The position numbers and the translations under genes were made by a program. Positions 8,990 to 37,235 of a stretch of DNA of 64,000 nt are shown here, one piece after another. Within the stretch, counting starts at the first letter, position 1. Each line of letters opens with the position of its first letter. The notes under the pieces were generated by a model, which worked only from the letters and a program-made list of their open reading frames with translations, was not told the DNA's origin and ran no database searches. The stretch is taken from IMG/VR virus record IMGVR_UViG_3300047320_000285, positions 186,001 to 250,000 of that record. One strand, written 5' to 3'.

Positions 8990-10432
8990 ATGCTGACTCT
9001 CGAAGCAATTCAAAGCGCCCAAGCGCTGGCCGATCGACTGGACGCGGCACGCGTGGTTGTGTTGGCAGCCCCGGGTACCCCGCTCGAAGCGCTGACCTCG
9101 GGCACGCGCGTTGACGATCATACGGGCGTGGTGCAAGCGGATGACGGTGGCTACTCGGCCAACGTGCAGTTTATCCACGCGATGGCCAACGTGCAAAACG
9201 ACAAGCTGGGTGCCAACCCGCATGACGTGGCCCTGAACGAAATCGCCGAAGTCGCGATTCCCGCTGTGACGGGTCACATCCAGTTCGCCCGCTCGACGGT
9301 GCGGCCGGTGATTGAAGATCTGGTCGAACGGGTGATGAAGTCGCTCGGTGAAGACAAGATCGAATTGGCGCTTGGCGCCGAAGTGATCGTGCAGGAATCG
9401 CCGGCACCGCTGACCAACGGCGCGTTCGACACGATGGTGCGCAAGTTTGAAGGTGTGCCGTACGCCCCGCCGGTGCTCGGGATGCGCTGCCCGGACCAGA
9501 CCATCGATGAAATCAAGGAACTGATGAAGACCGGTTCCGGTTCGGTGGACAAGGACATCGAAGCTTGGCTGGCAGCCGAAGGCGGCTCGTGGCTGATGGA
9601 GCTGTGGGAAAACGTCTTCCAGATCAAGCCGCGCGAAGCCGGTTACAGCGGCCGTCGCACGTTCGACGAATGGACCGCGGACAAGGCATGTGGCGTGGAC
9701 TTCTCGCTGGCGATTTTCCTGCTGGCGCGCAAGCTCTTCGACAGTCCGCTCGAAGGCACGGTGATGAATCTCAACGAGCACGAGCGGCTCGTGGCGGATT
9801 ACCGGGATCAGTCCGCGGCAGCGCTGTGTCGGTTTGTCGACCAGCTCGATCGCAATCGCAAGAACGGCATTCTGGTGGTGGGGCTGTCGCGCCTGAAGAC
9901 CACGGTCGATGCCGAAGTGTATCGCGAGTGGATCGAAAAGGGCGGCGAGAACGAAGTGCTGTTTGGCAATAGCCTGCGCACGATGCCGTTCACGTCGGTC
10001 ACCGACATCGAAGCAGCGGCAGCAGCCCTCAAGGGGGCATGGGATCAACACGCGGCGCTGGAAGACACGGTGCGCCGTAACCGTCAGTTCGATCGCACCC
10101 GGGAACTGTTCTTCCATCACTTCCGGGCGCAACTGGCGGAAGCCACCGAAGACGGCCAAGCGGATCTGGGCAATAGCGAGCAAGTGCTCGAGCGTTTCCG
10201 TCAGGGCTTGACCGCCGTGCGGGAAGACGACCTCGACTGCCTGTACACGCTGGCGACCAAGCTGGTCTGCGATGCACGTTTCCCCGACAAGGCGGCGTAC
10301 ACTATCCTGATGGGCATCGATCGCAACGTCAAGCAGAACCCGCATCTCGAACTGCGCGAAGCCGCCACGCTCGCGATCGTCGAGTATGTGTGCGACTGGC
10401 TCTCGGAGCAGTTCAAGCCGGTGCGCTACTAA
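8990..10432 (+). CDS. Putative virion/head protein of the protease operon
   Basis: 480 aa ORF with strong codon bias; sits between vRNAP beta and the prohead protease as in phiKZ-like phages. Confidence 0.6.
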   Translation: MLTLEAIQSAQALADRLDAARVVVLAAPGTPLEALTSGTRVDDHTGVVQADDGGYSANVQFIHAMANVQNDKLGANPHDVALNEIAEVAIPAVTGHIQFARSTVRPVIEDLVERVMKSLGEDKIELALGAEVIVQESPAPLTNGAFDTMVRKFEGVPYAPPVLGMRCPDQTIDEIKELMKTGSGSVDKDIEAWLAAEGGSWLMELWENVFQIKPREAGYSGRRTFDEWTADKACGVDFSLAIFLLARKLFDSPLEGTVMNLNEHERLVADYRDQSAAALCRFVDQLDRNRKNGILVVGLSRLKTTVDAEVYREWIEKGGENEVLFGNSLRTMPFTSVTDIEAAAAALKGAWDQHAALEDTVRRNRQFDRTRELFFHHFRAQLAEATEDGQADLGNSEQVLERFRQGLTAVREDDLDCLYTLATKLVCDARFPDKAAYTILMGIDRNVKQNPHLELREAATLAIVEYVCDWLSEQFKPVRY

Positions 10433-11954: not shown

Positions 11955-11993
11955 CGTCATAGGCCCCCGCTCACAAGGCGGGGGTTTATGCCG
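11955..11993 (+). terminator. Stem-loop terminator with TTTATGCCG tail
   Basis: CCCCCGC/GCGGGGG stem (11964-11984) followed by TTTATGCCG. Confidence 0.7.
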
Positions 11994-12000
11994 TGTTGTA

Positions 12001-12070
12001 TTTATTTTTGATCACATATTACCAACATGTACAAGCAGCACGAATGATCTTACACTTCCTCACACTGGAG
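12001..12070 (+). promoter_or_regulatory. Early (vRNAP-type) promoter and leader
   Basis: T-run then CATATTAC (12015-12022), resembling the phiKZ early consensus TATATTAC; near-duplicate at 33121-33208. Confidence 0.65.
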
Positions 12071-12077
12071 TCAAGCC

Positions 12078-12563
12078 ATGGGCGTCAAGATTGAGTTCAT
12101 CGTCAACAAACAACTCGGACTCGGACCGGTACAAACAAAGAAAGTCCAAGCCGATACCAAGCAGCTGGCGATCCTGCTGGGCAAGATCAATACCGACCCC
12201 AAGTGGGACAAGCTGCTGACCACAGGTAGCGGGATGTTGGCGGGCAAGGGTGACTTCCTGTTGCTGGAAGATCTAGACCTGAACACCAAGGCCAACAAAG
12301 AATACCTGCAAGATGCGGGTGAGCTGAAAGTGATCTGTCAGGCGCTGCTCGACGCCAAAGACACCGCGCTGCGCATGCGCCTGACGAAAGCGCAGAAACA
12401 GATGCTGCGCGAACAGACCGAAGGTCACTTGATGCTCTGTGGTGTAGAGATGGGTCGTCGGCCGGTTGCACCGAAAGGCCAGCCGTCGCGTTTTGTCGAC
12501 TGCCTGATGTTTCAACCCGAATATCGGACCAGCCGGATATTCGTTGTCTACAGCGATCTGTGA
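12078..12563 (+). CDS. Hypothetical early protein (161 aa)
   Basis: GGAG SD; first gene after the early promoter. Confidence 0.75.
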   Translation: MGVKIEFIVNKQLGLGPVQTKKVQADTKQLAILLGKINTDPKWDKLLTTGSGMLAGKGDFLLLEDLDLNTKANKEYLQDAGELKVICQALLDAKDTALRMRLTKAQKQMLREQTEGHLMLCGVEMGRRPVAPKGQPSRFVDCLMFQPEYRTSRIFVVYSDL

Positions 12564-12611
12564 CTGTACGAGACCGTACAAAGGTAGATTTTTACCACGC
12601 TCCACCATGCC

Positions 12612-13238
12612 ATGCCACACGGCAAACCTTACACTTTTCCAAACGAGACGAGACGATCTATGAGCGATGTTCTCCTGAAGTTTAATGGCCACACGCATGA
12701 CGCCAGCAAAGTGCTCGGCAAAGCCAGTCGGCCGGTGGAGGTCACCTACAAGGACATCAACACCGACATGAGCCTAGTGGAGTATCAGTGCGTGCCGCCG
12801 GGTTCGGATCCGCTCTACGGCGGCGCCACGGTGTTCATTCACTTTAACGGCAAGTACGTGCCGTTGATGGGTCGTGCGAAAGTCTTGACCGATAACTCGA
12901 ACCCCGAGCGTATCATCAAGGGCATGCTGATTACCAGCGTGGCACTGAAAGCAGCCCGGCTCGAAACCAGCTACGTCAGGCCGTCGGGTCCGACGACACT
13001 GCCGACCCCGAGCGAAGGCATCCGTGTCAGTCAACCCGAACATGCCCCGCTGAAGAATATCGATGCGCTGCGCGATCGTTTCAGCAGTCCTGCATCCAAG
13101 CCGAGCCCGCGTCATCACGACACGGAGCGTCGGCCGTCTCAGAATTACGGCGGCACTAGCCGTCCGGAATCGGCCACCGGGAGTTCGCTGCGTTCCCGTA
13201 GTCCGTATCGTGGCACCACCAAACGCAGCGGAGTCTAG
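12612..13238 (+). CDS. Hypothetical protein with Ser/Arg/Pro-rich disordered C-terminus (start may be 12660)
   Basis: 208 aa ORF with phage-like codon usage. Confidence 0.65.
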   Translation: MPHGKPYTFPNETRRSMSDVLLKFNGHTHDASKVLGKASRPVEVTYKDINTDMSLVEYQCVPPGSDPLYGGATVFIHFNGKYVPLMGRAKVLTDNSNPERIIKGMLITSVALKAARLETSYVRPSGPTTLPTPSEGIRVSQPEHAPLKNIDALRDRFSSPASKPSPRHHDTERRPSQNYGGTSRPESATGSSLRSRSPYRGTTKRSGV

Positions 13239-13303
13239 CGCTAGACTTCTTTAGACGCAGTAACATTCTTCAATCACAAAACCGAAACAAGGAAGGTATT
13301 ATC

Positions 13304-13771
13304 ATGGCAAAGGAAATCAGCCAAAAGAGCCACGACGACGCAAAGGCACTGCGCAAGCTCCTCGACATCGATCCGAAGACGGGCGTGACCAAGGACGTGC
13401 CGAAGGACTGGTACGACGGTCAGCGCGAAGCATTCGGCGTCGATCCCGAGCAGCTCAAGCTGGTGCGTGAACTCGACACCCACGTCGCGCAAGTCGCCAC
13501 CCTCGCCGTCGGCGAAGAAGCGAACCACCTCGGCAAGAAGAGCAAGGATCTGGACCGCGTGCAGGTCAAGATCCACGCCGACGGTCGCAACGGTTTCAAC
13601 GTCGACTGGAAGCGCCGCATCGAAACGATGAACCCGACCACCAAGGAAAAGGGCGAAAAGTTCGGCGTGGTCAACGTCAAGTTCGACTTCTACGGCACGG
13701 GCACGCACGGCGAGATGAAGCTGATCCGCGAACACATCGCCACGCAAGGCGCTGCCTCGCTGGCAGACTGA
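13304..13771 (+). CDS. Hypothetical protein (155 aa), probably highly expressed
   Basis: AGGAAGG SD and strong C-ending codon bias; terminator downstream. Confidence 0.8.
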   Translation: MAKEISQKSHDDAKALRKLLDIDPKTGVTKDVPKDWYDGQREAFGVDPEQLKLVRELDTHVAQVATLAVGEEANHLGKKSKDLDRVQVKIHADGRNGFNVDWKRRIETMNPTTKEKGEKFGVVNVKFDFYGTGTHGEMKLIREHIATQGAASLAD

Positions 13772-13847
13772 ACGTCGCGCGGCCGACGCGCTGGTGCTTC
13801 TGAGACCGTTGTGATGGGCGACTCGGAGCACCAGCACTGAGCAAGAC

Positions 13848-13890
13848 CCCGCCCCTTCGGGGGCGGGCATTTCCTCGCTTCTTTTTTTTT
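13848..13890 (+). terminator. Intrinsic terminator
   Basis: CCCGCCCC-TTCG-GGGGCGGG stem followed by a long T-run. Confidence 0.7.
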
Positions 13891-13897
13891 GGCTCAA

Positions 13898-14347
13898 ATG
13901 AACAGAATCGATTTCGATCTCATCGTTAATGAGTTGCGTAAGGGCTTGCGCCCCCACACCGATCCGATCGCTCAGGCAATCTTGGCGCGCACTCAGTTCT
14001 TCCACGAATTCCGCACTATCGGCCTCACAGCGGCTCGGCAGACGGGTAAGTCCCGTTGGGCCTTCGAGCAGCTGGCGAAGGATCGTAGCGCCTGTATGAT
14101 CGTCCCCAAGGGCTTAACGCGCGATGAGATCTTTCAGTACGAGGATCGCATGGGGGTGGTGAATGTGGATGAACGCACCTTTACGATCCGGGAAGTACAA
14201 CACCTGATTTGCCGGGACAAGTTTGAAGCGTGGTCAACGATTTACTTCGATGATGCCACGCACAAGTACCACTTTCTGAAAAAGCAATTGCTGGAGTATC
14301 TGCACAAACACCAGCGTTTTGAGACGACGATTATCCTCGTCGGTTAA
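13898..14347 (+). CDS. Small P-loop protein resembling a terminase/helicase ATPase fragment
   Basis: Walker A-like AARQTGKS and Walker B-like TIYFDD in about 150 aa. Confidence 0.6.
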   Translation: MNRIDFDLIVNELRKGLRPHTDPIAQAILARTQFFHEFRTIGLTAARQTGKSRWAFEQLAKDRSACMIVPKGLTRDEIFQYEDRMGVVNVDERTFTIREVQHLICRDKFEAWSTIYFDDATHKYHFLKKQLLEYLHKHQRFETTIILVG

Positions 14348-14371
14348 ACCTCTTACTGATTACCTACTACA

Positions 14372-14614
14372 ATGAACAACATTGAAAGCCGTGTAAAGCA
14401 AATCGTCGCCCATCAGACCGGTGTCTCGGAGACGGCCATCAGTGGCGAGCAAAACCTCGTCAAGGATCTGGGCATGGACAGTCTCGATGAAGTGGAATGC
14501 CTGATGGCGATCGAAGACACCTTCGACCTGCGCATCGAGGACGAAGACGCCCGTGAAATGAAGACCGTGCAGCAACTGGTCGATTACGTCACCAAAGCCA
14601 AGCAACCGGCGTAA
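14372..14614 (+). CDS. acpP: Acyl carrier protein
   Basis: 80 aa acidic protein: IESRVKQIVAHQTG...DLGMDSLDEVECLMAIEDTFDLRIEDEDA...TVQQLVDY. The DSL phosphopantetheine serine is intact. Confidence 0.93.
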   Translation: MNNIESRVKQIVAHQTGVSETAISGEQNLVKDLGMDSLDEVECLMAIEDTFDLRIEDEDAREMKTVQQLVDYVTKAKQPA

Positions 14615-14682
14615 GGGACGGATGATGACTGATGATTACCGCAGTTGGCTTTCGAGCCGTCTGATGGGCGAAGCCGGATTGG

Positions 14683-15192
14683 TTGATGATCCGAGCTTCG
14701 TATTACCTTCCACGCCACGCACACCGAATAATGACAACCGACTCAAGTGTGGTCGAGAAGGAAAAGGCACCCAACTTTTTCTTGTGGACCATTCAAATCC
14801 CCCAATGGCGCCGTCACCGAACGGCCGGTCTCAAACTCATTGACATCACCGTCAAGAGTGGCGACCACGCGTTTGCCCCGCATGGTTTTGATTTAAAGCA
14901 GTACAAGGCCGGAGCGATGTCGGAAGATGAATACACCGAACGCTATATGGACAAGATGCTCGAGTCCATGCAGGAGCATAAAAGCCACTGGGACCATCTG
15001 TCAGCGTATAAATACGCGGTCTACGGCTGCTACTGTCCGGAAGGGGCCTACTGCCATCGGCATCTGTTTAAGAACTTGGCCAAAGCCCATCTGGAAGGGA
15101 TGGGTTGGACGCCTAAGTTGATGGGGGAGTTTCACGGGGATCTGGAAGGGTTGGTGATTTCTGATGCGTTCCAACATGCCTGTCCGGCATAA
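14683..15192 (+). CDS. DUF488-like protein (start may be 14731)
   Basis: DITVKSG..FAP, EYTERY and a CYC....CHR motif typical of DUF488-type proteins. Confidence 0.6.
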   Translation: MMIRASYYLPRHAHRIMTTDSSVVEKEKAPNFFLWTIQIPQWRRHRTAGLKLIDITVKSGDHAFAPHGFDLKQYKAGAMSEDEYTERYMDKMLESMQEHKSHWDHLSAYKYAVYGCYCPEGAYCHRHLFKNLAKAHLEGMGWTPKLMGEFHGDLEGLVISDAFQHACPA

Positions 15193-15229
15193 AGGCCCAG
15201 CCCCCGCAAGGGAGCTGGGCTTTATGCCG
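15185..15229. terminator. Bidirectional terminator between convergent genes
   Basis: CGGCATAAAG-GCCCAGC...GCTGGGC-TTTATGCCG near-perfect inverted repeat. Confidence 0.75.
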
Positions 15230-15236
15230 CCGTGGC

Positions 15237-16112
15237 TTAAACCACAGCTGCCGTCGCAGCGAGATTGGTGATACCGTTCGAATAGCCTTGGGCTTGCGCC
15301 GTGACTTCCGCACTGATCTGCTGTACGAACGCTTGCCGGTTGTACGGGTTCGCGTTGGTGATGTTGATCGAGTTCAGCAATTGCTGGCAGAACGCGATCA
15401 CGCCGCTGCCTTGCTGGGCCAAGCAGGAGAACTCGACGTCCAGCGTGCCGATTTCACCGCCTTGCGTAAGTTCACGCTGGCCACCCAACGAACCGCCGAT
15501 GCCGTTCTTCGGGTACATGTTCGTGCACAGCCAAGCCTTGTTGACCTTGGTGTGCGTCGGATCCGGCTCGATAAACGCCATGGTGGCCGAGTAACGATCC
15601 GCGAGCATGTCGGGTACAGCGTTGCCGGGGATGGTGTTCACGGAAGCGACCTTGCTTTCCGGATCCATCATGCAGTAACGTACCCAGCCGGTGAGGAAGT
15701 TGTAGATCGCCAGACCGTAGCGCTCGTTCCAACGGAACGTCGGGTTGGAGCGCTGCATCGTGACGTTGGTGAACTCTTCCTGAACCTGACCGCCGCCGCC
15801 CACCGGATTGGCATCCGAGGTTTCGATGGTCATTTCCATGTTCAGACCCGTGATCGACAGGGCTTGCAACTCGACGAGCGAGCGCAGGGTGCCGACCCAG
15901 AAGTCCGGTTGGTCGAGATTCTGGAACGCCGTGGGCGCCTCGATCAGCAAACAGATGAGGTTCCGGCGCACGTACGCCTGATTGCTCACCCAGCTGGTCA
16001 AGTCCGGCGTGTAGCCGTTTTGGCCACCGTTGCGCAGGTCGACCATGCTGTTGGTCGTGCCTTTCGCGTAGGCTACGCCTTGCGGCAGAAACACGTTGTT
16101 AATTCGACTCAT
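15237..16112 (-). CDS. Tail tube protein (phiKZ gp30-like)
   Basis: 291 aa directly downstream of the sheath gene; contains the WVSNQAYVRRNLICLLIEAP segment that I recognise from this family. Confidence 0.8.
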   Translation of the reverse strand: MSRINNVFLPQGVAYAKGTTNSMVDLRNGGQNGYTPDLTSWVSNQAYVRRNLICLLIEAPTAFQNLDQPDFWVGTLRSLVELQALSITGLNMEMTIETSDANPVGGGGQVQEEFTNVTMQRSNPTFRWNERYGLAIYNFLTGWVRYCMMDPESKVASVNTIPGNAVPDMLADRYSATMAFIEPDPTHTKVNKAWLCTNMYPKNGIGGSLGGQRELTQGGEIGTLDVEFSCLAQQGSGVIAFCQQLLNSINITNANPYNRQAFVQQISAEVTAQAQGYSNGITNLAATAAVV

Positions 16113-16186
16113 TTAGTCTGTCCTCAGTACGAGATCGATAGAAACCGTTGTCGAGGACCCCGTAAGGGGCCCCCAGCCTTCGGACG

Positions 16187-18319
16187 TTAGCCGGTGGTCG
16201 TGGTCGTGCCAGCCGGCAGATCTTCCATGCGGTACGCGCTGATCTGAAGCGTTTGCACGGTCTTCATGTTGTTCGCGAACAGCTTGATGTTCAGCGACCA
16301 GCTGAAACCACGCGCCAAGTCGGCGGCGCTGAAGTACGTGTCCGGCTGAATCACGAACCGGCCGTCGAAACGTTGGTTCGTGTTGTCGATCACGTACTGG
16401 TTGACGCGCGACACCAGCTGGGCGTTGGTGAGCTGCGTGTTGCCCGAGAAAGCCCGACGCGCACGCTGACCGACCTTTTCCAGTTCCACACAGCCGAGCA
16501 TCGTGATGATCGACGTGAGCACCGAGGTGTCGTTGTCGTACACCGTCTTGAACGCCGGGAAGTACAGCGCCCGACGGCTGAACGATTCGACCCACACCAG
16601 CCCGTTGGCCCAGTCCTTGTTGCGCACCGTGCTCGGCGTGAACGTGACATTCACATTCGAGAACAGGTTCACTTGGTTCTGCGGCCAAATGTCGAAACCA
16701 CCACCCGGCTTCCAGACGCCGTTGCCGGCACCCATGTAGTCGGCCAGCTTGTCAGCCAGCTCGATGGTGAGCGGCAGCGGGTTGTCGTACAGCGCGCCCG
16801 TGAGCGTGCCCGAACGGCCGATAATCGCACCGCGCATCGTCGACGTACCGAAGTAGTCCGATTCCGGGAACTGCTGCAACCGCGTCTTCAGTGCCACCGC
16901 CAGCGACGATTCTTCGTCAGCCGTGAGCACCGCGCCCGAGGCGTCGTACGGCGTGAGGAACACCGCCATGTCCTTACGGATAGCGATGACGCTGATCAGG
17001 TCGTACTTCGTCTGCAACGGGAAGCCCGTGTCGTACACCACCGATTCCGGATAACGGGCGTCGTCCAGATACGGTGAGAGCGGATCCGCGTAGCTCACCA
17101 CGTCAGCCGACACCAGCCCCGCGAACAGTGCGTTGCTCATCGTGCCGTCGCCACCACCCGTGAGGTAGAACGACGAGGCTTCCGACAGGCGCTGCGCGTT
17201 GGTGTCTTCCGTGTCCAGTACGATGGCCGTGTAGGGCACGTTCTGGCTCGACACGCAGCTGAATGGGTTCAGCCGGTACTGGTTGACAGCATCCGTGTCG
17301 GTGGTCACGAAGTCCGAGAAGCTGTCCGCGAACGGCTTTTCAGCGACGAAGAACTCAGCGAGCAGCGTGTCGACGAGCGACTGATACACCGCGAACTTAC
17401 CGATCGGGCCATACTGGTTCGGCAGACCCGACGGGTCATTGAGCAGCTGGTAGCTCTTCGGGAACTTCTTGGTGATGTAGAACTCGCTCTCATCGATCGA
17501 GCTGATCACCCCGGTTTTCAGACAGAAGTCGATCGACTGCGACGCGGACTGCGTCGGTACGATCTGCGCCGTGGCGTTGGCGCTGGACTTCTGCAGCATC
17601 TGCAGACGAAACGGATACACCCCGTCGGTCGTCAGGCTGGTGCTGTTGATCGGCGTCGAGGATTGCTCCGTCGGCGCGAACACACGCACACCGATCAAGT
17701 CGCCGATGGCGGCTTGGAACGGGTACTCGAAGTCCATGAACGGGTAGCGTTGCGACTGCGACGTCGATGCGCTGTCGGTCTGGTCGCCCGGCATGATGGT
17801 GCCCTTGCCGAAGCCGGTCGAACCGTCTGTTGCCAGGGCGATCGGCGTGACCACCCACTTGATCTTGTAGCCCGTGACGGTCGCCCCTTCGCCCACCACT
17901 TGCAACGGATCCCCGTTGGTATCGGTCTTGATGCTGCCATCGATATTGCGCTGCCAGTTCGGGACCTGAATCGGACCCAGCACATCCAGCCACAAACGGC
18001 CGTTCGAGGGCGGCGGCGCATCGGCCGGCACCACTCGCTGCATCATCATGCTGTTGCCTTTCGCGTTGACCGTATTGATCAGCGCGGTCGCGTGCGTCGC
18101 CCACGGCTTGCGATAGTCGAACGAATCCACGCCATACATCTGCGTCATCGCATCGCCTACCACCAGCTGCGGGTCGGACGGCCCAGTTTGCGCGTAGGTG
18201 TAGACCTTCGGAAGGTGGGTGGGCAGCACTTCCGGCACCGGTGCCAATGGCCTGGTGCTGTCGTCTTGCACACCCAGCATAACGGTCATCGGCGCGGCGT
18301 TCACAATTTGTTGCACCAT
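16187..18319 (-). CDS. Contractile tail sheath protein (phiKZ gp29-like)
   Basis: 710 aa; sheath-like C-terminus (YDTGFPLQTK, YFPAFKTVYDNDTSVL, RFDGRFVIQPDTY); followed by the tube gene. Confidence 0.85.
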   Translation of the reverse strand: MVQQIVNAAPMTVMLGVQDDSTRPLAPVPEVLPTHLPKVYTYAQTGPSDPQLVVGDAMTQMYGVDSFDYRKPWATHATALINTVNAKGNSMMMQRVVPADAPPPSNGRLWLDVLGPIQVPNWQRNIDGSIKTDTNGDPLQVVGEGATVTGYKIKWVVTPIALATDGSTGFGKGTIMPGDQTDSASTSQSQRYPFMDFEYPFQAAIGDLIGVRVFAPTEQSSTPINSTSLTTDGVYPFRLQMLQKSSANATAQIVPTQSASQSIDFCLKTGVISSIDESEFYITKKFPKSYQLLNDPSGLPNQYGPIGKFAVYQSLVDTLLAEFFVAEKPFADSFSDFVTTDTDAVNQYRLNPFSCVSSQNVPYTAIVLDTEDTNAQRLSEASSFYLTGGGDGTMSNALFAGLVSADVVSYADPLSPYLDDARYPESVVYDTGFPLQTKYDLISVIAIRKDMAVFLTPYDASGAVLTADEESSLAVALKTRLQQFPESDYFGTSTMRGAIIGRSGTLTGALYDNPLPLTIELADKLADYMGAGNGVWKPGGGFDIWPQNQVNLFSNVNVTFTPSTVRNKDWANGLVWVESFSRRALYFPAFKTVYDNDTSVLTSIITMLGCVELEKVGQRARRAFSGNTQLTNAQLVSRVNQYVIDNTNQRFDGRFVIQPDTYFSAADLARGFSWSLNIKLFANNMKTVQTLQISAYRMEDLPAGTTTTTG

Positions 18320-29074: not shown

Positions 29075-29139
29075 TGTTCCTTCCTCACTGTTTGTTGGGT
29101 CTTCGGCTTATCCGCATCGGTAGACCAGCTGACCACCTA

Positions 29140-29760
29140 AAGGTGTCACACTATAGCGGTCATATAGAAAAGTTACACAGTCTCTGCTCGGGCCGCTGTT
29201 GCCCCCTTCCCCTCGCCGCCCTCCCGGCCGCAAACCTTAATACGTCCGCTCGCCGCGCGGCTGTAAGTCGCGAAGTTCAATGTAGCAGAAGGCTTCCAAG
29301 ACTTCTGCGATAGATTGATACAAAACCGGTTTGTGTGTTGTAGGTTTTTCCCTTTACCTACCGGTAGGTCTCGATTTTACCGTAGGTACCTGCTCGATAG
29401 GGAGAGTTCCCCCAGAACTCTCCCGGCTATCCTAGCTAAGCTGGTTTGTTACAATTTGTTACCAAATTGCAGTTTTTGGGTTTTTAGAGTAAGATAATCT
29501 TTACCTCAGTATTACGGAGTAATACTGAGGATAGATGAAATATTTAACTTCATTCATACCTGATGTAGAAATAATAAAAAAATAATCTTAGAGAAAAACG
29601 CGTGCCGCAGGCAGTTTTTTGAGAATTTCGGGAAAAAGTCTGTTACATCTTGTTACAATTGTAAGGAATGAGGGCAGAGGTCTGCCTATTTATTAGGCAA
29701 CTGAGACGATACAGGGTCCTATCAGTTTTTACACCAAGCGATCATGCTCTGAGTCACGCA
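29140..29760. promoter_or_regulatory. Long non-coding region with palindromes, repeats and an AT-rich tract (candidate origin or control region)
   Basis: No credible ORF; several perfect inverted repeats, four TGTTAC copies, and an A/T-rich tract at about 29535-29600. Confidence 0.5.
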
Positions 29761-29768
29761 TGATGTGA

Positions 29769-30056
29769 ATGAACAATGAGGAAGCGAACGTGATGTTGAT
29801 GAACTTACTGGGTCGGCTCTGCGGTCGTCCCTTAACTAAACAAGAACGACTCGAGCGTTTGCAGCAGAGTCTGATTACGACCATCCGTCAGGGTCGCGAT
29901 GAGGACGATGCCACCGCAGTAGCACTGGCGATTCGGGCGGATGCGATTCTGAAACAGGATCTACCGTTCGATCTGCGCTGTCAGCAGCTGCATGACGTGG
30001 TGGTTACGCATGCAGCCCAAAAGCTCCTCACGCGCCTCGAGTCTTATCACCACTAA
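29769..30056 (+). CDS. Hypothetical protein (95 aa)
   Basis: ORF with helical amphipathic composition; start uncertain. Confidence 0.5.
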   Translation: MNNEEANVMLMNLLGRLCGRPLTKQERLERLQQSLITTIRQGRDEDDATAVALAIRADAILKQDLPFDLRCQQLHDVVVTHAAQKLLTRLESYHH

Positions 30057-30063
30057 GAACAAC

Positions 30064-30375
30064 ATGACACAACAAGAACCATCATCGGCGGGGTTAGGCT
30101 TTGAAGGTCACTTGCAACGCATGGCGAAGCTGAAAGCCGAACGTGAAAGTTTACAGCGTCAGCTCATGCTTCTGAACGTGACCATTGCCATTGTCAGGGC
30201 CAAAGGTAGTGAGCGAGACTGGCCGGAGGACTTTCCACATGAGAACGGTGTGTACAACAACTGGTGCTGCTCATGCAAGAAGAACTTCCTCGGCTACAAA
30301 CGTCGCGTCATCTGCAAGCTTTGTTCAGGGGATCCACAGACTGGCTCCGTCGTAACGGAATCGGTCTCACTTTAA
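30064..30375 (+). CDS. Small Zn-finger-like protein
   Basis: DWPEDFPHENGVY..WCCSC...F.G.KRRVICKLC with two CxxC pairs. Confidence 0.6.
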   Translation: MTQQEPSSAGLGFEGHLQRMAKLKAERESLQRQLMLLNVTIAIVRAKGSERDWPEDFPHENGVYNNWCCSCKKNFLGYKRRVICKLCSGDPQTGSVVTESVSL

Positions 30376-30421
30376 GCGCACTGGTCGTCTTGGCGGGTGC
30401 GCTCTGGTCGAAATTAGGGAA

Positions 30422-30604
30422 ATGAATATGTTGCACATCTACCAAGGCGGCTCGGCCGCACACTCGTCGGTGGTGTTATCACCGGCAGATTTTCAAATGC
30501 GCGAACGTCCTGAAACCAAGTGGTTCCCGGAGTTGACGGTGAAGATTACCGTAGCGGGTCGTCAGTTCACCATTCTGGAACGTGGGGAGCGGCGCCGACA
30601 ATGA
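30422..30604 (+). CDS. Small hypothetical protein (60 aa)
   Basis: AGGGA SD; its stop overlaps the next start (ATGA). Confidence 0.45.
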   Translation: MNMLHIYQGGSAAHSSVVLSPADFQMRERPETKWFPELTVKITVAGRQFTILERGERRRQ

Positions 30605-30900
30605 GTGAGGAACCGCGCAAGATTCTGATCGTCGGGGCAGGGGCAGGCTTGGGTCGAGAACTGGCTAAACTGATCATGCGTGACGAACGCTTGCGCGGTC
30701 AGGTGGTCTTAGTGGATAAGCTCCCCGAGGACCACCACTCAGCTCATGAACCCGTGGATCTGGACCAACTCATGGATCGCTTACGGGGTGAGCTGCCAGA
30801 GTTGCGTGCTCCCGTGGTTCAGCGTCGCGAACACAACGCGTTACTGCCGTACCATGGCAAGTCCAAGCATGACCGGCAAAGGAAATGGTGGAACCGATGA
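30601..30900 (+). CDS. Hypothetical protein with a Rossmann-like GxGxxG N-terminus, ending RKWWNR
   Basis: GGGGAG SD; KILIVGAGAGLGRELA; too short for a full dehydrogenase. Confidence 0.55.
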   Translation: MSEEPRKILIVGAGAGLGRELAKLIMRDERLRGQVVLVDKLPEDHHSAHEPVDLDQLMDRLRGELPELRAPVVQRREHNALLPYHGKSKHDRQRKWWNR

Positions 30901-31187
30901 CACCTGATGCTCGTGAGTATCATTTCATGGTACCTGATGAACTTCCGGAGTTTGCCAAGACGGATCTGCTCATCAACGGGTGCCGTCTAGGAAAGGACTA
31001 CTATCATGACCCCTCTGTCATGGGGGACCGTCCTAGTTTCTCTGAGCTTGCTGCTCAGCTACGCGCTGCTAATGAGGAGCCACAGCAAGCGGAGAGTGGT
31101 AACGAAGCAGGACCAGATCGAAACGGCAAGAAGCCCCGCACCCCCAAGCTACCTAACATCGCCCGCCAAAAATGGTGGAACCGTTAA
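30897..31187 (+). CDS. Hypothetical protein ending QKWWNR
   Basis: ATGA overlap with the previous stop codon; GGTGGA SD. Confidence 0.55.
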   Translation: MTPDAREYHFMVPDELPEFAKTDLLINGCRLGKDYYHDPSVMGDRPSFSELAAQLRAANEEPQQAESGNEAGPDRNGKKPRTPKLPNIARQKWWNR

Positions 31188-35581: not shown

Positions 35582-35589
35582 AGGAACTG

Positions 35590-36268
35590 CTATGGGGCTG
35601 CGCCTTGTGTCGCTCGCCGCCGCGATTTGCACCGGCTTCGCACACGCGTTTAACGCGAGTTCGTGGAAGGTGGTCGCGGCGTCGACGGCATGGAACAGGG
35701 CTCAGCGTGACGAACCCGGACCTGGAATCGCTTCTGGGCAAACCGGGATCAGCCGGGGTCGCCAGTCAAGTGATGGCTGGCGCTTCGCACAACGCGTCCC
35801 GAGGAGGACTGTGGCACGGGTTAAGGGTATCCGTCAGCCGCAGTTAGCTTGACTCGGCGCGATGGTCTCGCGAAGAACCCAACTACCTCTGGGGCTGCAC
35901 TGCCGAACCGAGCCGCGTCGGGGGAGCATCAGGTGTGGCGCCCAGCTGGGCACGTTGAGCTAACTCTCTTTCCACCAGAGAGTGATGAAACATGAAATGG
36001 CCTGCCACCGCCGGTGAGCAGACGGACGAAGCACTTCAGGGTTAGATGGGACCGTAAGCCGCGTGACGTATTAGCCCATGGGACTAGCGTACGGGAGCCG
36101 AGAGCCGCCGGAATCGCCTGCAAGGCACGAAGTCCAAGGTATCCGCTACTTAGATGAGACCTAGTCCGCCCCCGGTTTCCGGGTCAGCCGCTAGGAGATT
36201 CGTAAGGGCGGGCCTTCAAGAACCTCTTGCTTCGGCAGGGGGTAGTCTTGAAGGCCCGTTTTTCTTTT
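35590..36268 (+). ncRNA. Candidate large structured non-coding RNA (about 670 nt), family unrecognised
   Basis: No credible ORF; begins at a TATG motif, contains many helices with G-U pairs, and ends in a 13-bp terminator stem plus T-tract. Confidence 0.6.
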
Positions 36269-36278
36269 AGGAGTTTTC

Positions 36279-36788
36279 ATGTCACGTCGTTATCACCACC
36301 CACCCTTTAGCGAACACCAGCTGAGCAATGCGGTGGGCGCGTTCAAGACGTGGGATGATCAGATCAAGAACCACGGTCAGATCCTGTCGGTCGAAGATCT
36401 GGTCCACCGGATCGCTGAATGTCTGTTTGAGGAAGTCGATCTGAACCCCAAACCGGATCGACTGGTGTATCTGTCCTCGCCTTACAATCACCCCGATCCC
36501 GAGGTGAAGGAAAAGCGTCGTAAGGCCGCCTGTAGCGCCGCTGGTTATCTGATCGAGCGCGGTATCCCGGTTCACTCACCGATCGCCCACAACGCCGCGA
36601 TTCTGGAGCAAACGAGTGGCAAGAGTGGGTGGGAGATCTGGAAGCCGCAGGATCTGGCGCTGCTTAAGGCCAGCACGGAAATGGTGATTCTGTGTCTGCC
36701 GGGTTGGGAAGCCTCTGAAGGGATTCGGGGTGAGTTCCACGCCGCCATGGAGATGGGTAAGCCCGTGAGCTATATGCGAGCTGATTAA
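36279..36788 (+). CDS. DUF1937 / nucleoside 2-deoxyribosyltransferase-like protein
   Basis: LVYLSSPY, HSPIAH, W...D..L, LPGWEASEGIRGE and GKPV motifs. Confidence 0.75.
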   Translation: MSRRYHHPPFSEHQLSNAVGAFKTWDDQIKNHGQILSVEDLVHRIAECLFEEVDLNPKPDRLVYLSSPYNHPDPEVKEKRRKAACSAAGYLIERGIPVHSPIAHNAAILEQTSGKSGWEIWKPQDLALLKASTEMVILCLPGWEASEGIRGEFHAAMEMGKPVSYMRAD

Positions 36789-36875
36789 CTGGGTCCGGCC
36801 CGTGTGGCCGGGCTTTATGCCCCTGTGTGTGATTTCTTACATAGGCAACAAATACTGTGTATAGGGGACACCACT

Positions 36876-37235
36876 ATGATCCGATCTTACATAAACGACG
36901 CGCCACGAGCGTTGCTGATTCAGGATGTGCACGAGCTACGCGCCGAGTTCCGGTTGTTGTGGCAGGAGATGGCTGACTACGATATCGACGAACACGAGGT
37001 ACTGGAGTGGATTATCGCCAACTGGTTGCGTGAGCGTCATCATCTGCTTGTCTGGGACCACAACCCGCACAGCCCGACCATGCATGCCATCAAGAACTTC
37101 CTGCGTGAATTCACGGCTTTCCCCTTAAACCAGTTGCTTGAGAAATATATCATCGCACCTGTTCTGTATAAGGGCTGTCGAGACATCACCTTGGATTTGC
37201 GTGGCGTCGACCTGTACCTCTGGTACTTCAAATAA
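36876..37235 (+). CDS. Hypothetical protein, paralogue array member 1
   Basis: AGGGG SD before ATG 36876. Confidence 0.7.
   Translation: MIRSYINDAPRALLIQDVHELRAEFRLLWQEMADYDIDEHEVLEWIIANWLRERHHLLVWDHNPHSPTMHAIKNFLREFTAFPLNQLLEKYIIAPVLYKGCRDITLDLRGVDLYLWYFK

What the first reader, a model, noticed from the sequence alone, without database searches (positions are those of the whole stretch)
14372..14614. Phage-encoded acyl carrier protein with intact phosphopantetheine serine and no partner synthase genes nearby
Seen: a complete AcpP-like protein (DSL motif at residues 36-38) in an accessory island, with no fatty-acid, PKS or PPTase gene in the window. Established: host AcpP supplies acyl groups for phospholipid, lipid A and acyl-homoserine-lactone synthesis, and binds SpoT and MukB. 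Inference: the phage ACP might redirect lipid flux (phiKZ-like phages form a membrane-bound early infection vesicle), alter quorum signalling, or act as a decoy for host ACP-binding proteins.
Basis: partly seen in the sequence, partly recalled or inferred. Interest (0 to 1): 0.6.

Follow-up and report, generated by a model that had tools for sequence, protein, structure and literature searches.

The report
Orphan acyl carrier protein in jumbo phage
A nucleus-forming giant phage from rhizosphere soil carries a complete but strongly diverged copy of the bacterial acyl carrier protein and no enzyme of its own to load or use it, so it must act through host enzymes; lone phage copies of this kind are already annotated in many large phages, and what they do is still unknown.

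Summary
Window 14372-14614 (+) encodes an 80-aa AcpP-type acyl carrier protein. It scores 83.3 bits on TIGR00517 (cut-off 70.45), has Asp36-Ser37-Leu38, and models as a four-helix bundle.

The phage genome is 253.7 kb and phiKZ-like, with chimallin and PhuZ. I found no PPTase, fatty-acid, PKS/NRPS or acyltransferase gene anywhere in it.

The gene is not an assembly chimera. Syntenic orthologues (60-74% identity) occur in several independent soil metagenomes, its composition is phage-like, and dN/dS is 0.15-0.39.

It sits in a variable slot between the head-protease and tail-tube genes. It is absent from the nearest cultured relatives (Burkholderia FLC9, Ralstonia RP12).

It is at most 54% identical to any of 80 proteobacterial AcpPs, which share a median 76% with each other. 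The DSL motif and the acidic helix II are kept. Thirteen near-invariant AcpP positions are replaced across the clade, including charge reversals around helix III.

My best reading (confidence about 0.4): host AcpS modifies it, and it then acts as a partner-selective competitor in the host's ACP network rather than as a plain spare ACP. Expression and modification could not be tested.

Lone ACPs are already annotated in many phages (PHROG 5934), so this is a new member of a known kind with an unknown function.

The parts
14372..14614 (+). Gene for the 80-aa AcpP-type acyl carrier protein (stop codon included). Predicted helices are I 4-16, II 38-51, III 57-62 and IV 66-77.
   Evidence: HMM matches. 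(AF2 model, pLDDT 77.8; Foldseek TM 0.8-0.86 to E. coli AcpP chains). (dN/dS 0.15-0.39).
14477..14485 (+). Codons for Asp36-Ser37-Leu38. Ser37 (AGT, 14480-14482) is the expected 4'-phosphopantetheine attachment site at the N-terminus of helix II.
   Evidence: sequence. The motif is invariant in all 21 aligned phage-associated relatives and in 80 bacterial AcpPs.
13898..14347 (+). Upstream gene, 24 nt from the ACP gene. It encodes a 149-aa mini P-loop protein (RecA/DEAD-like) with a Walker A-like AARQTGKS and a Walker B-like IYFDD, and belongs to PHROG 2586 (function unknown). The ATG at 13898 is preferred over the TTG at 13889 by comparison with the 149-aa orthologues. It is co-located with the ACP gene but not strictly linked to it.
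   Evidence: A relative in run X7 lacks this gene (joint 13890->14361) but keeps the ACP.
14731..15192 (+). Downstream gene for a 153-aa DUF488-N3a protein. It belongs to the conserved backbone of the island, because it is also present in relatives that lack the ACP. The ATG at 14731 is preferred over the TTG at 14683 by comparison with the 153-aa orthologue.
   Evidence: PF22751, 32.6 bits, cut-off 27. (homologues in L004, FLC9, L023 and L024).
14615..14730 (.). Variable spacer between the ACP and DUF488 genes. Relatives carry 177-359 other bases here, with an extra 92- or 113-aa ORF. The 73-aa ORF at 14622-14843 in the window is probably not a gene.
   Evidence: joints 14617->14694 and 14617->14761 with other letters between.
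13847..13890 (+). GC-rich hairpin (13847-13867) followed by a T tract (13879-13890), immediately upstream of the 149-aa gene. It is a likely transcript boundary that separates the 149-aa/ACP/DUF488 unit from the genes upstream.
   Evidence: Sequence-based only; no transcript data.
15184..15231 (.). Bidirectional hairpin (15196-15220) flanked on both strands by the genome-wide motif TTTATGCCG. It lies between the convergent DUF488 and tail-tube genes and is the likely 3' end of the ACP-containing unit.

Best explanation
The gene encodes an AcpP-derived carrier protein, most likely captured from a betaproteobacterial host lineage. A clade of soil and rhizosphere nucleus-forming jumbo phages keeps it as an accessory gene.

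The phage has no phosphopantetheinyl transferase and no ACP-using enzyme. The protein must therefore be made in the host cytoplasm, be converted to its holo form at Ser37 by the host AcpS, and meet host ACP-client proteins through its conserved acidic helix II.

Thirteen positions that are near-invariant in bacterial AcpPs are replaced in the whole clade. They include F29L, L43C/T, I63M and A69L, and E54R, P56E and E61R around helix III. The first four correspond to residues that I recall as lining the E. coli AcpP acyl pocket; I did not test that here. Because of these changes I read the protein as a partner-selective competitor or decoy, not an interchangeable spare AcpP. It would occupy or divert a subset of the host's ACP-dependent enzymes or regulators during takeover, for example lipid A or phospholipid acyltransferases, acyl-homoserine-lactone synthases, or SpoT.

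Shown here: identity as an AcpP-type ACP, orphan status, conservation under purifying selection, the divergence pattern, and the variable genomic slot. Inferred: modification by host AcpS, which host partners it binds, and whether the effect is inhibition or diversion.
For: Identity: TIGR00517 83.3 bits against a 70.45 cut-off, PF00550, a four-helix model matching E. coli AcpP at TM 0.8-0.86, and pI 4.33 with net charge -9.

Orphan status: no PF01648, PF00109, PF00501 or PF08541 in six frames of the complete genome, and no lipid, PKS or NRPS family among 238 proteins.

Maintained gene: syntenic orthologues at 70-74% (L004, L018, one ENA contig) and 60% (P0005) from independent samples. dN/dS is 0.15-0.39. 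D-S-L is invariant in 21 relatives.

Divergence: best identity to 80 beta/gamma-proteobacterial AcpPs is 53.8%, while those share a median 76% and a minimum 61.5%. The clade sits on a long stem in the tree. Of 49 near-invariant AcpP columns, 25 are kept in all four clade members, including D36, S37, L38, D39, E42, E48, I55 and D57; 13 are replaced in all four.

Within the clade, helix I and loop I vary while the DSL-to-C-terminus half, including the new Arg54, Glu56 and Arg61, is nearly invariant.

Related ACPs in other phages are also orphans set among small early or host-takeover-type genes.

AcpS compatibility: a predicted complex with the E. coli AcpS trimer gave weak support only. The score was 0.37 with a best control of 0.01.
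Against: There are no expression, modification or binding data, and no RNA run holds the phage.

The AcpS complex result is weak and may reflect the model's memory of solved AcpS-ACP complexes.

The protein still passes an equivalog-level AcpP model, so it may still work in fatty-acid synthesis.

Fast evolution is common in phage genes and does not by itself prove a change of function.

About 70% of the phage's proteins have no family assignment, so an unrecognised phage partner enzyme cannot be excluded.

The host is unknown. A betaproteobacterium is inferred only from cultured relatives and from the best bacterial matches.
Confidence: 0.4

Rival explanations
1. Classical auxiliary metabolic gene. 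The phage ACP is loaded by host AcpS and FabD and works as an extra, functional carrier in host type II fatty-acid synthesis. It sustains or boosts phospholipid and lipid A supply after host gene expression is shut down.
For: It scores above the TIGR00517 equivalog cut-off. The DSL motif and all the helix II acidic residues kept in bacterial AcpPs are retained. The literature treats phage acpP as a lipid AMG.
Against: It is more diverged from every sampled AcpP than those are from each other. Thirteen near-invariant positions are replaced, including F29, L43, I63 and A69, with charge reversals at E54 and E61. It falls below the cut-offs of the tighter AcpP equivalog models NF002149 (92 bits against 106) and NF002151 (69.5 against 92). 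From general knowledge, host AcpP is very abundant and stable, so supply is unlikely to limit a single infection. The closest cultured relatives do without the gene.
Confidence: 0.25
2. Dedicated carrier for a phage-encoded enzyme that current family models do not recognise. The enzyme could be the co-located P-loop or DUF488 protein, or a protein encoded elsewhere. Together they would give a phage-specific acylation or 4'-phosphopantetheine-dependent reaction.
For: Clade-specific invariant residues on the helix II/III face (R54, E56, R61, L69 and the KAKQPA tail) suggest a specific partner. Most phage proteins have no family assignment. In a second chimallivirus-like clade the ACP is always directly preceded by the same 164-aa unknown protein.
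Against: The neighbours are not linked to the ACP. DUF488 occurs without it in FLC9, L023 and L024. A relative keeps the ACP without the P-loop gene. The spacer gene varies between relatives. ACPs in other phages have entirely different neighbours. No PPTase is present, so host AcpS would still be required.
Confidence: 0.15
3. A role that does not depend on the prosthetic group. Examples are a small acidic protein packaged in the virion or used in assembly, or an acidic mimic that acts against a host defence or a DNA-binding protein.
For: The gene lies between head and tail structural modules on the same strand as the head genes. An ACP was detected by mass spectrometry of Eneladusvirus jumbo-phage proteins and listed beside the generally known structural proteins (PMC7760394). 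The protein is acidic, with net charge -9.
Against: Ser37 and the whole DSL-helix II signature are invariant across 21 phage-associated relatives. That is not expected if the attachment site were irrelevant. The gene is separated from the structural genes by hairpin elements. There is no match to PADLOC defence models. Relatives in temperate phages sit in early regions, not structural ones.
Confidence: 0.1
4. Not a real phage gene: an assembly chimera with host DNA, or a decaying passenger gene without function.
For: The phage is known only from metagenome assemblies. The run that holds it fully may be its own source.
Against: The same gene order appears in contigs from other studies and samples (L004, L018, an ENA contig, a JGI contig). 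GC is 54.3%, GC3 is 71.6% and codon score is typical of the phage. The frame is intact and under purifying selection. Identity to the best bacterial AcpP is only 54%.
Confidence: 0.03

Closest known systems
Bacterial housekeeping AcpP (type II fatty-acid synthase acyl carrier protein; TIGR00517; e.g. E. coli AcpP, PDB 1T8K/2FAD family)
   Same: It has the same length, the same predicted four-helix fold (TM 0.8-0.86) and the DSL serine at the start of helix II. It keeps the acidic helix II residues and an acidic pI. It scores above the TIGR00517 cut-off.
   Different: Identity is only 46% to E. coli AcpP and at most 53.8% to 80 beta/gamma-proteobacterial AcpPs, which share a median 76%. There is no fabD-fabG-acpP-fabF context. 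Thirteen near-invariant positions are replaced (F29L, T40E, L43C/T, V44L, L47I, E54R, P56E, E61R, K62E/N, I63M, A69L and others). It has a basic C-terminal KAKQPA tail. It is encoded by a phage.
Orphan acyl carrier proteins annotated in other large phages (PHROG 5934; e.g. Ralstonia phage phiRSL1 ORF083, Burkholderia phage BCSR5, Brevundimonas phage Bajun, Pseudomonas phage HRDY3, Eneladusvirus, Cronobacter GAP32)
   Same: These are small PP-binding proteins with no adjacent synthase, set among small hypothetical genes, mostly in jumbo phages. Their function is untested in the literature I could search.
   Different: They are only 25-51% identical to this protein. The four cultured carriers I checked lack a phiKZ-type capsid gene. 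The window phage is nucleus-forming and phiKZ-like, and its nearest cultured relatives, FLC9 and RP12, have no ACP.
ACPs of a second chimallivirus-like metagenomic clade (P0010-P0012; contigs of 126-291 kb)
   Same: They are also orphan ACPs in phages with PhuZ tubulin and the divergent DNA polymerase. They are 53% identical by BLASTP (49% over the full-length alignment) and keep the DSL motif.
   Different: They lie at a different locus, directly after PhuZ and a 164-aa unknown protein. They are closer to bacterial AcpP (68% to a Paraburkholderia AcpP). They keep E54, E61, L43, V44 and F29. Whether one capture or several gave rise to the two clades is unresolved.
Specialised bacterial ACP paralogues (e.g. 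NodF, AcpXL, RkpF, extra ACPs of Pseudomonas and Ralstonia). This comparison is recalled knowledge, plus the Ma et al. 2017 reference seen.
   Same: These are diverged AcpP-like proteins that keep the serine but do not replace AcpP in fatty-acid synthesis.
   Different: The bacterial paralogues are encoded next to their dedicated synthases or transferases. The phage ACP has none in the whole genome.

Membership tests
AcpP-type acyl carrier protein (TIGR00517 / Pfam PF00550) | Profile score above the curated cut-off over the full length | tested here: met
   TIGR00517 scores 83.3 bits against 70.45, covering positions 1-76 of 77. NF002148 scores 83.7 against 71. PF00550 scores 47.4 against 20.8.
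AcpP-type acyl carrier protein (TIGR00517 / Pfam PF00550) | Conserved Asp-Ser-Leu with the serine at the N-terminus of helix II | tested here: met
   D36-S37-L38 is present. Predicted helix II starts at residue 38. The motif is invariant in 21 relatives and in 80 bacterial AcpPs.
AcpP-type acyl carrier protein (TIGR00517 / Pfam PF00550) | Four-helix bundle fold; small acidic protein | tested here: met
   The AF2 model has helices 4-16, 38-51, 57-62 and 66-77 with pLDDT 77.8. Foldseek top hits are AcpP chains at TM 0.8-0.86. The pI is 4.33 and the net charge is -9.
AcpP-type acyl carrier protein (TIGR00517 / Pfam PF00550) | Serine carries 4'-phosphopantetheine (holo form made by AcpS or an Sfp-type enzyme) | not testable with these tools
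   The phage has no PPTase. The predicted complex with the E. coli AcpS trimer gave weak support only: score 0.37, best control 0.01. Mass spectrometry is needed.
Housekeeping AcpP of type II fatty-acid synthesis (functional equivalog) | Sequence conservation typical of AcpP orthologues, which is constrained by many partner enzymes | tested here: not met
   Best identity to 80 AcpPs is 53.8%, while their mutual median is 76% and minimum 61.5%. Thirteen of 49 near-invariant columns are replaced in the whole clade. The protein falls below the cut-offs of equivalog models NF002149 (92 against 106), NF002151 (69.5 against 92) and NF002147 (59.1 against 84).
Housekeeping AcpP of type II fatty-acid synthesis (functional equivalog) | Genomic context with fab genes (fabD-fabG-acpP-fabF) | tested here: not met
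   No ketoacyl synthase or FabH-type domain was found in six-frame searches. No Acyl_transf_1 or short-chain dehydrogenase family appeared in the Pfam scan of 238 called proteins. The neighbours are a P-loop mini-protein and a DUF488 protein.
Housekeeping AcpP of type II fatty-acid synthesis (functional equivalog) | Supports fatty-acid synthesis (complements acpP loss) | not testable with these tools
   This needs a genetic complementation experiment.
Phage acyl carrier protein family PHROG 5934 | Profile match over most of the family model; phage-encoded | tested here: met
   E is 4.1e-21 at 75.9 bits, covering profile positions 13-87 of 93. The gene is embedded in a phiKZ-like genome.
Dedicated carrier protein of a PKS/NRPS or specialised acyl pathway | A cognate synthase, adenylating enzyme or transferase encoded nearby | tested here: not met
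   No AMP-binding or ketoacyl synthase domain was found in six-frame searches. No condensation or acyltransferase family appeared among the 238 scanned proteins.
Auxiliary metabolic gene (host-derived metabolic gene kept by a phage) | Host-like origin | tested here: inconclusive
   The best bacterial matches are Betaproteobacteria (Variovorax, Cupriavidus, Ralstonia, Paraburkholderia and others) at 55-58% by tblastn. That agrees with the hosts of the nearest cultured phages. The tree does not resolve a donor, and long-branch effects are possible.
Auxiliary metabolic gene (host-derived metabolic gene kept by a phage) | Expressed during infection and altering host metabolism | not testable with these tools
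   No RNA run holds the phage.

The most novel reading that the evidence does not exclude
The phage ACP has been remodelled on its helix II/III face and at four positions that correspond to recalled acyl-pocket residues of E. coli AcpP. The changes (Arg54, Glu56, Arg61, Leu69) are invariant in the clade. On this reading it is a holo-ACP mimic that binds one specific target. That target could be a host ACP-sensing regulator such as SpoT, an acyl-ACP-using signal or envelope enzyme, or a still unrecognised phage enzyme. If so, nucleus-forming phages would have a dedicated handle on host lipid or stringent-response signalling, and this would be the first defined function for the widespread orphan phage ACPs.
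Probability: 0.25. Interest if true: 0.7.

Novelty: new member of a known kind. Interest (0 to 1): 0.4.

Why it matters
Lone ACP genes recur in large phages of many lineages, and nobody has shown what they do. This case is unusually clean: the genome appears complete (127-bp terminal repeat; CheckV estimate 79%) and no partner enzyme was found in it. It also has a set of natural variants that mark which surface is under selection, and relatives with and without the gene. Together these make it a good entry point for testing whether phages use ACP mimics to steer host lipid, envelope or stress signalling. If it proves to be only a spare carrier, it is an ordinary auxiliary gene.

Tried and rejected
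- Megablast of the island against GenBank phages gave no match.
- Pattern scans for close ACP relatives found none in IMG/VR or in the first genome-contig scan.
- 'Relatives' cannot be drawn for a virus record.
- Two weak PP-binding matches fall in a 496-aa protein at genome 35684-37174. I rejected them as spurious: the protein looks like a repetitive virion or fibre protein lying in a region that holds ten DUF7941 paralogues, and it has no DSL context.
- The 73-aa ORF at 14622-14843 is rejected as a gene, because it lies in a spacer that varies between relatives and has no homologue there.
- The TTG starts at 13889 and 14683 are replaced by the ATGs at 13898 and 14731, by comparison with orthologues.
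- I tested whether the neighbours form a module with the ACP. They do not: the DUF488 gene occurs without the ACP, and the ACP occurs without the P-loop gene.
- PADLOC gave no meaningful match for the island proteins.
- The 164-aa protein that precedes the ACP in the second clade looked to me like a histidine phosphatase (RHAEK...WHHG). Pfam gave no support, so this stays a lead only.
- The link to the early infection vesicle is rejected on timing.
- The phylogeny (quick IQ-TREE, 79 columns) could not resolve one capture from several, or name a donor. The careful search did not finish in the time allowed.
- Expression could not be tested, because no RNA run holds the phage.
- The reference ACPS_RALN1 was not held, so E. 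coli AcpS was used instead.

Full report
**1. What is there**

Window 14372-14614 (+) is an intact ATG-started ORF of 80 codons.
- It matches Pfam PP-binding (E 2.2e-12).
- It matches NCBIfam TIGR00517 acyl_carrier above the curated cut-off (83.3 against 70.45 bits, full length).
- It matches PHROG 5934 'acyl carrier protein' (E 4.1e-21).
- Asp36-Ser37-Leu38 are encoded at 14477-14485.
- An AlphaFold2 model (pLDDT 77.8) has four helices at 4-16, 38-51, 57-62 and 66-77.
- The best structural matches are E. coli AcpP chains, at TM 0.8-0.86 and about 46% identity. Acinetobacter baumannii AcpP is 52% identical, and Pseudomonas putida and Vibrio harveyi AcpPs are 49%.
- The protein is acidic, with pI 4.33 and net charge -9.

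**2. The genome**

The window is bases 186001-250000 of a single 253,740-bp IMG/VR virus record. It has a 127-bp direct terminal repeat and 56.9% GC.

The genome encodes a phiKZ-type major capsid protein, chimallin, PhuZ-like tubulin, the divergent family B DNA polymerase, an S80 head protease, and phiKZ-type sheath and tube proteins. It is therefore a nucleus-forming, Chimalliviridae-like jumbo phage.

The nearest cultured phages by tail sheath are Burkholderia phage FLC9 (53.6%) and Ralstonia phages FLC1-1B, RP31 and RP12 (46-49%). The DNA comes from a rhizosphere metagenome, and partial relatives occur in soil metagenomes.

**3. No partner genes anywhere**

Six-frame searches of the whole genome found none of the following, while each model rang in 10-14 control genomes:
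- ACPS/PPTase (PF01648)
- ketoacyl synthase (PF00109)
- AMP-binding (PF00501)
- FabH-type domain (PF08541)

I called 269 genes with a codon-usage model. I then scanned the 238 proteins of 85-900 aa against Pfam in four batches. Each batch returned fewer than the 25-family display limit, so the lists are complete. None contains a fatty-acid, PKS, NRPS, acyltransferase or thioesterase family.

Limits: 31 very short or very long proteins were not scanned by Pfam, and most phage proteins have no family at all.

The only other PP-binding signals are two sub-threshold matches in a repetitive 496-aa protein that looks like a virion or fibre protein. I regard them as spurious.

**4. Not a chimera; a maintained accessory gene**

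The gene order is: head protease, several small genes, a 155-aa gene, a 149-aa gene, the ACP, a variable spacer, DUF488, then the convergent tail tube gene. This order recurs in:
- a 10.4-kb Logan contig (L004; ACP 74% identical)
- a 1.2-kb contig from another run (L018; 70%)
- an ENA contig (71%)
- a JGI contig (P0005; 60%)

Laying contigs of four runs from four studies on 12000-16200 showed the same picture.

Between the window and L004 the flanking structural genes are 93-97% identical, but the ACP is only 74% identical.

| Gene (pairs compared) | dN/dS |
|---|---|
| ACP (three pairwise comparisons: window, L004, L018) | 0.15-0.39 |
| Flanking genes (window vs L004) | 0.06-0.12 |

The ACP is therefore under purifying selection, but less tightly than its neighbours.

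Its GC (54.3%), GC3 (71.6%) and codon score are typical of the phage.

**5. An insertion in a variable slot**

FLC9, RP12 and two IMG/VR relatives (L023, L024) share the protease-to-tube arrangement. FLC9, L023 and L024 also keep the 155-aa and DUF488 genes. None of the four has an ACP there or anywhere else in its record.
- One relative (run X7) keeps the ACP but lacks the upstream 149-aa gene.
- L004 lacks the 161-aa gene at 12078-12563.
- The spacer between the ACP and DUF488 holds different DNA in each relative.

So the ACP is a lineage-specific accessory gene and is not tied to either neighbour.

The upstream protein is a mini RecA/DEAD-like P-loop domain from a phage family of unknown function. 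The downstream protein is DUF488-N3a.

Hairpin elements at 13847-13890 and 15184-15231 bracket the 149-aa/ACP/DUF488 unit. I could not identify a promoter or an expression class.

**6. Relation to bacterial AcpP**

Of 600 pattern hits in the species-representative genomes, the best 80 are housekeeping-type AcpPs. They come mainly from Betaproteobacteria (Variovorax, Cupriavidus, Ralstonia, Paraburkholderia, Trinickia, Janthinobacterium and others) at 55-58% tblastn identity. That agrees with the host range of the nearest cultured phages.

Those 80 AcpPs share a median 76% identity, with a minimum of 61.5%. The window protein reaches at most 53.8% to any of them.

In a quick maximum-likelihood tree the island clade (P0001-P0006) is one group with SH-aLRT support 94 on a long stem. 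Its placement relative to other phage ACPs and to the bacteria is unresolved, and long-branch attraction is possible.

Column by column, 49 columns are at least 90% conserved in the bacterial set.
- **Kept in all four close clade members (25 columns):** these include D32, L33, G34, D36, S37, L38, D39, E42, M45, A46, E48, F51, I55, D57, E58, A60, T65, V66, Q67 and D71.
- **Replaced in all four (13 columns):** K10, E14, F29L, T40E, L43C/T, V44L, L47I, E54R, P56E, E61R, K62E/N, I63M and A69L.

From what I recall of E. coli acyl-ACP structures (not tested here), F28, L42, I62 and A68 in E. coli mature numbering line the acyl pocket. E53-E60 flank and form helix III, and helix II carries the acidic residues recognised by AcpS and the Fab enzymes.

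So the universal recognition helix and the attachment site are kept, while those four positions and the helix III surface are remodelled.

Within the clade, helix I and loop I vary freely. The half from the DSL motif to the C-terminus, including the new arginines, is almost invariant.

**7. Other phage ACPs**

tblastn found ACP-like genes in 54 GenBank phage records at 25-51% identity. In phiRSL1, BCSR5, HRDY3 (two in tandem) and Bajun they lie among small hypothetical genes with no synthase nearby. None of those four phages has a phiKZ-type capsid gene.

A profile word search found further relatives.
- One set (P0010-P0012; 53% identical by BLASTP, 49% over the full-length alignment) lies in other chimallivirus-like contigs of 126-291 kb. 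There the ACP follows PhuZ tubulin and a 164-aa unknown protein. Core genes of that phage are 40-54% identical to the window phage.
- Others lie in early regions of temperate phages.

All 21 aligned sequences keep D-S-L.

The literature I could search mentions phage ACPs only as annotations or putative auxiliary metabolic genes. One report detected an ACP by mass spectrometry of phage proteins. I found no functional study.

**8. Mechanism**

Because the phage has no PPTase, any holo form must be made by a host enzyme.

A predicted complex of the protein with a trimer of E. coli AcpS gave weak support only.
- The score was 0.37 and the best of three controls was 0.01.
- The pass mark was reached by 51 of 78 solved complexes and 2 of 108 mismatched pairs.
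- At scores of 0.60 or under, it was reached by only 5 of those 78 solved complexes, and by all 4 mismatches that passed (of 180).
- The runs agree in at least 65% of contacts, and the partner's pLDDT is at least 81.
- The job is unlike the calibration set, and the pass may come from the model's memory of solved AcpS-ACP complexes.

I take this only as compatibility.

The recognition face is kept, several near-invariant core and helix III positions are altered, divergence is accelerated, and no partner is encoded in any of the phage lineages that carry such genes. Taken together, this makes me favour a partner-selective competitor or decoy in the host ACP network (confidence about 0.4). The rivals are:
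- a plain spare carrier for host fatty-acid synthesis (0.25)
- a carrier for an unrecognised phage enzyme (0.15)
- a role independent of the prosthetic group (0.1)
- an artefact (0.03)

The proposed link to the early infection vesicle is unlikely. That vesicle forms at genome injection, probably from host inner membrane, before phage proteins are made.

**9. Verdict**

The feature is a new member of a known kind: an orphan phage ACP, here in nucleus-forming phiKZ-like phages, where I found none among the four cultured ACP-carrying phages I checked. Its function is unproven. Interest is moderate (0.4).

Noticed in passing
window 11963-11994, 15184-15231 and about 40 further sites across the genome (e.g. 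genome 23750, 66151, 109931, 114615, 125860, 214094); also L027 about 9090-9130: A GC-rich hairpin is followed directly by (C/T)TTATGCCG(T), often with a TTTCTTTTTT tract a few bases later. It recurs after genes and is 11-15 times enriched in intergenic DNA. Between convergent genes it occurs on both strands of one hairpin. The motif is shared with a distantly related chimallivirus-like contig. It is probably the phage's transcription terminator and/or promoter signal, and it contains TATG.
   Followed up: partly
L027 7496-7990, L028 6108-6602, L029 2-472: In a second chimallivirus-like clade the ACP is always preceded, with a 10-nt gap, by a 164-aa protein carrying RHAEK and WHHG motifs that recall histidine phosphatases. 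Pfam gives no match. About 1 kb of non-coding DNA follows the ACP there.
   Followed up: partly
window 13898-14347: A 149-aa stand-alone P-loop mini-protein has a Walker A-like AARQTGKS and a Walker B-like IYFDD. Its Atlas model resembles the first RecA-like domain of DEAD/ResIII helicases (TM about 0.64). It belongs to a phage-wide family with no Pfam model (PHROG 2586).
   Followed up: partly
window 14731-15192: A DUF488-N3a ('active subclade') protein is conserved next to the tail tube gene in the window phage, FLC9 and two IMG/VR relatives. FLC9's annotation (88 aa) appears truncated at the N-terminus, because tblastn aligns 180 positions.
   Followed up: partly
genome about 19-37 kb (loci L007-L008), e.g. 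35684-37174: The first quarter of the genome holds ten paralogous proteins of family DUF7941. A repetitive 496-aa protein in the same region gives spurious weak PP-binding matches.
   Followed up: no
window 12078-12563: This 161-aa gene is present in the window phage but cleanly absent from the close relative L004 (joint 12040->12563). It is a second presence/absence polymorphism in the same island.
   Followed up: no
whole genome (loci L010-L012): Other accessory functions are present: a NADAR domain, two calcineurin-like phosphoesterases, a papain-like protease, a YadA-anchor protein, two DUF6527 proteins, thymidylate synthase and kinase, and a dCTP deaminase-like protein.
   Followed up: no
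window 29075-31005 and 35582-36278: These stretches have little or no confident coding sequence. No tRNA or Rfam family was found in the window.
   Followed up: partly
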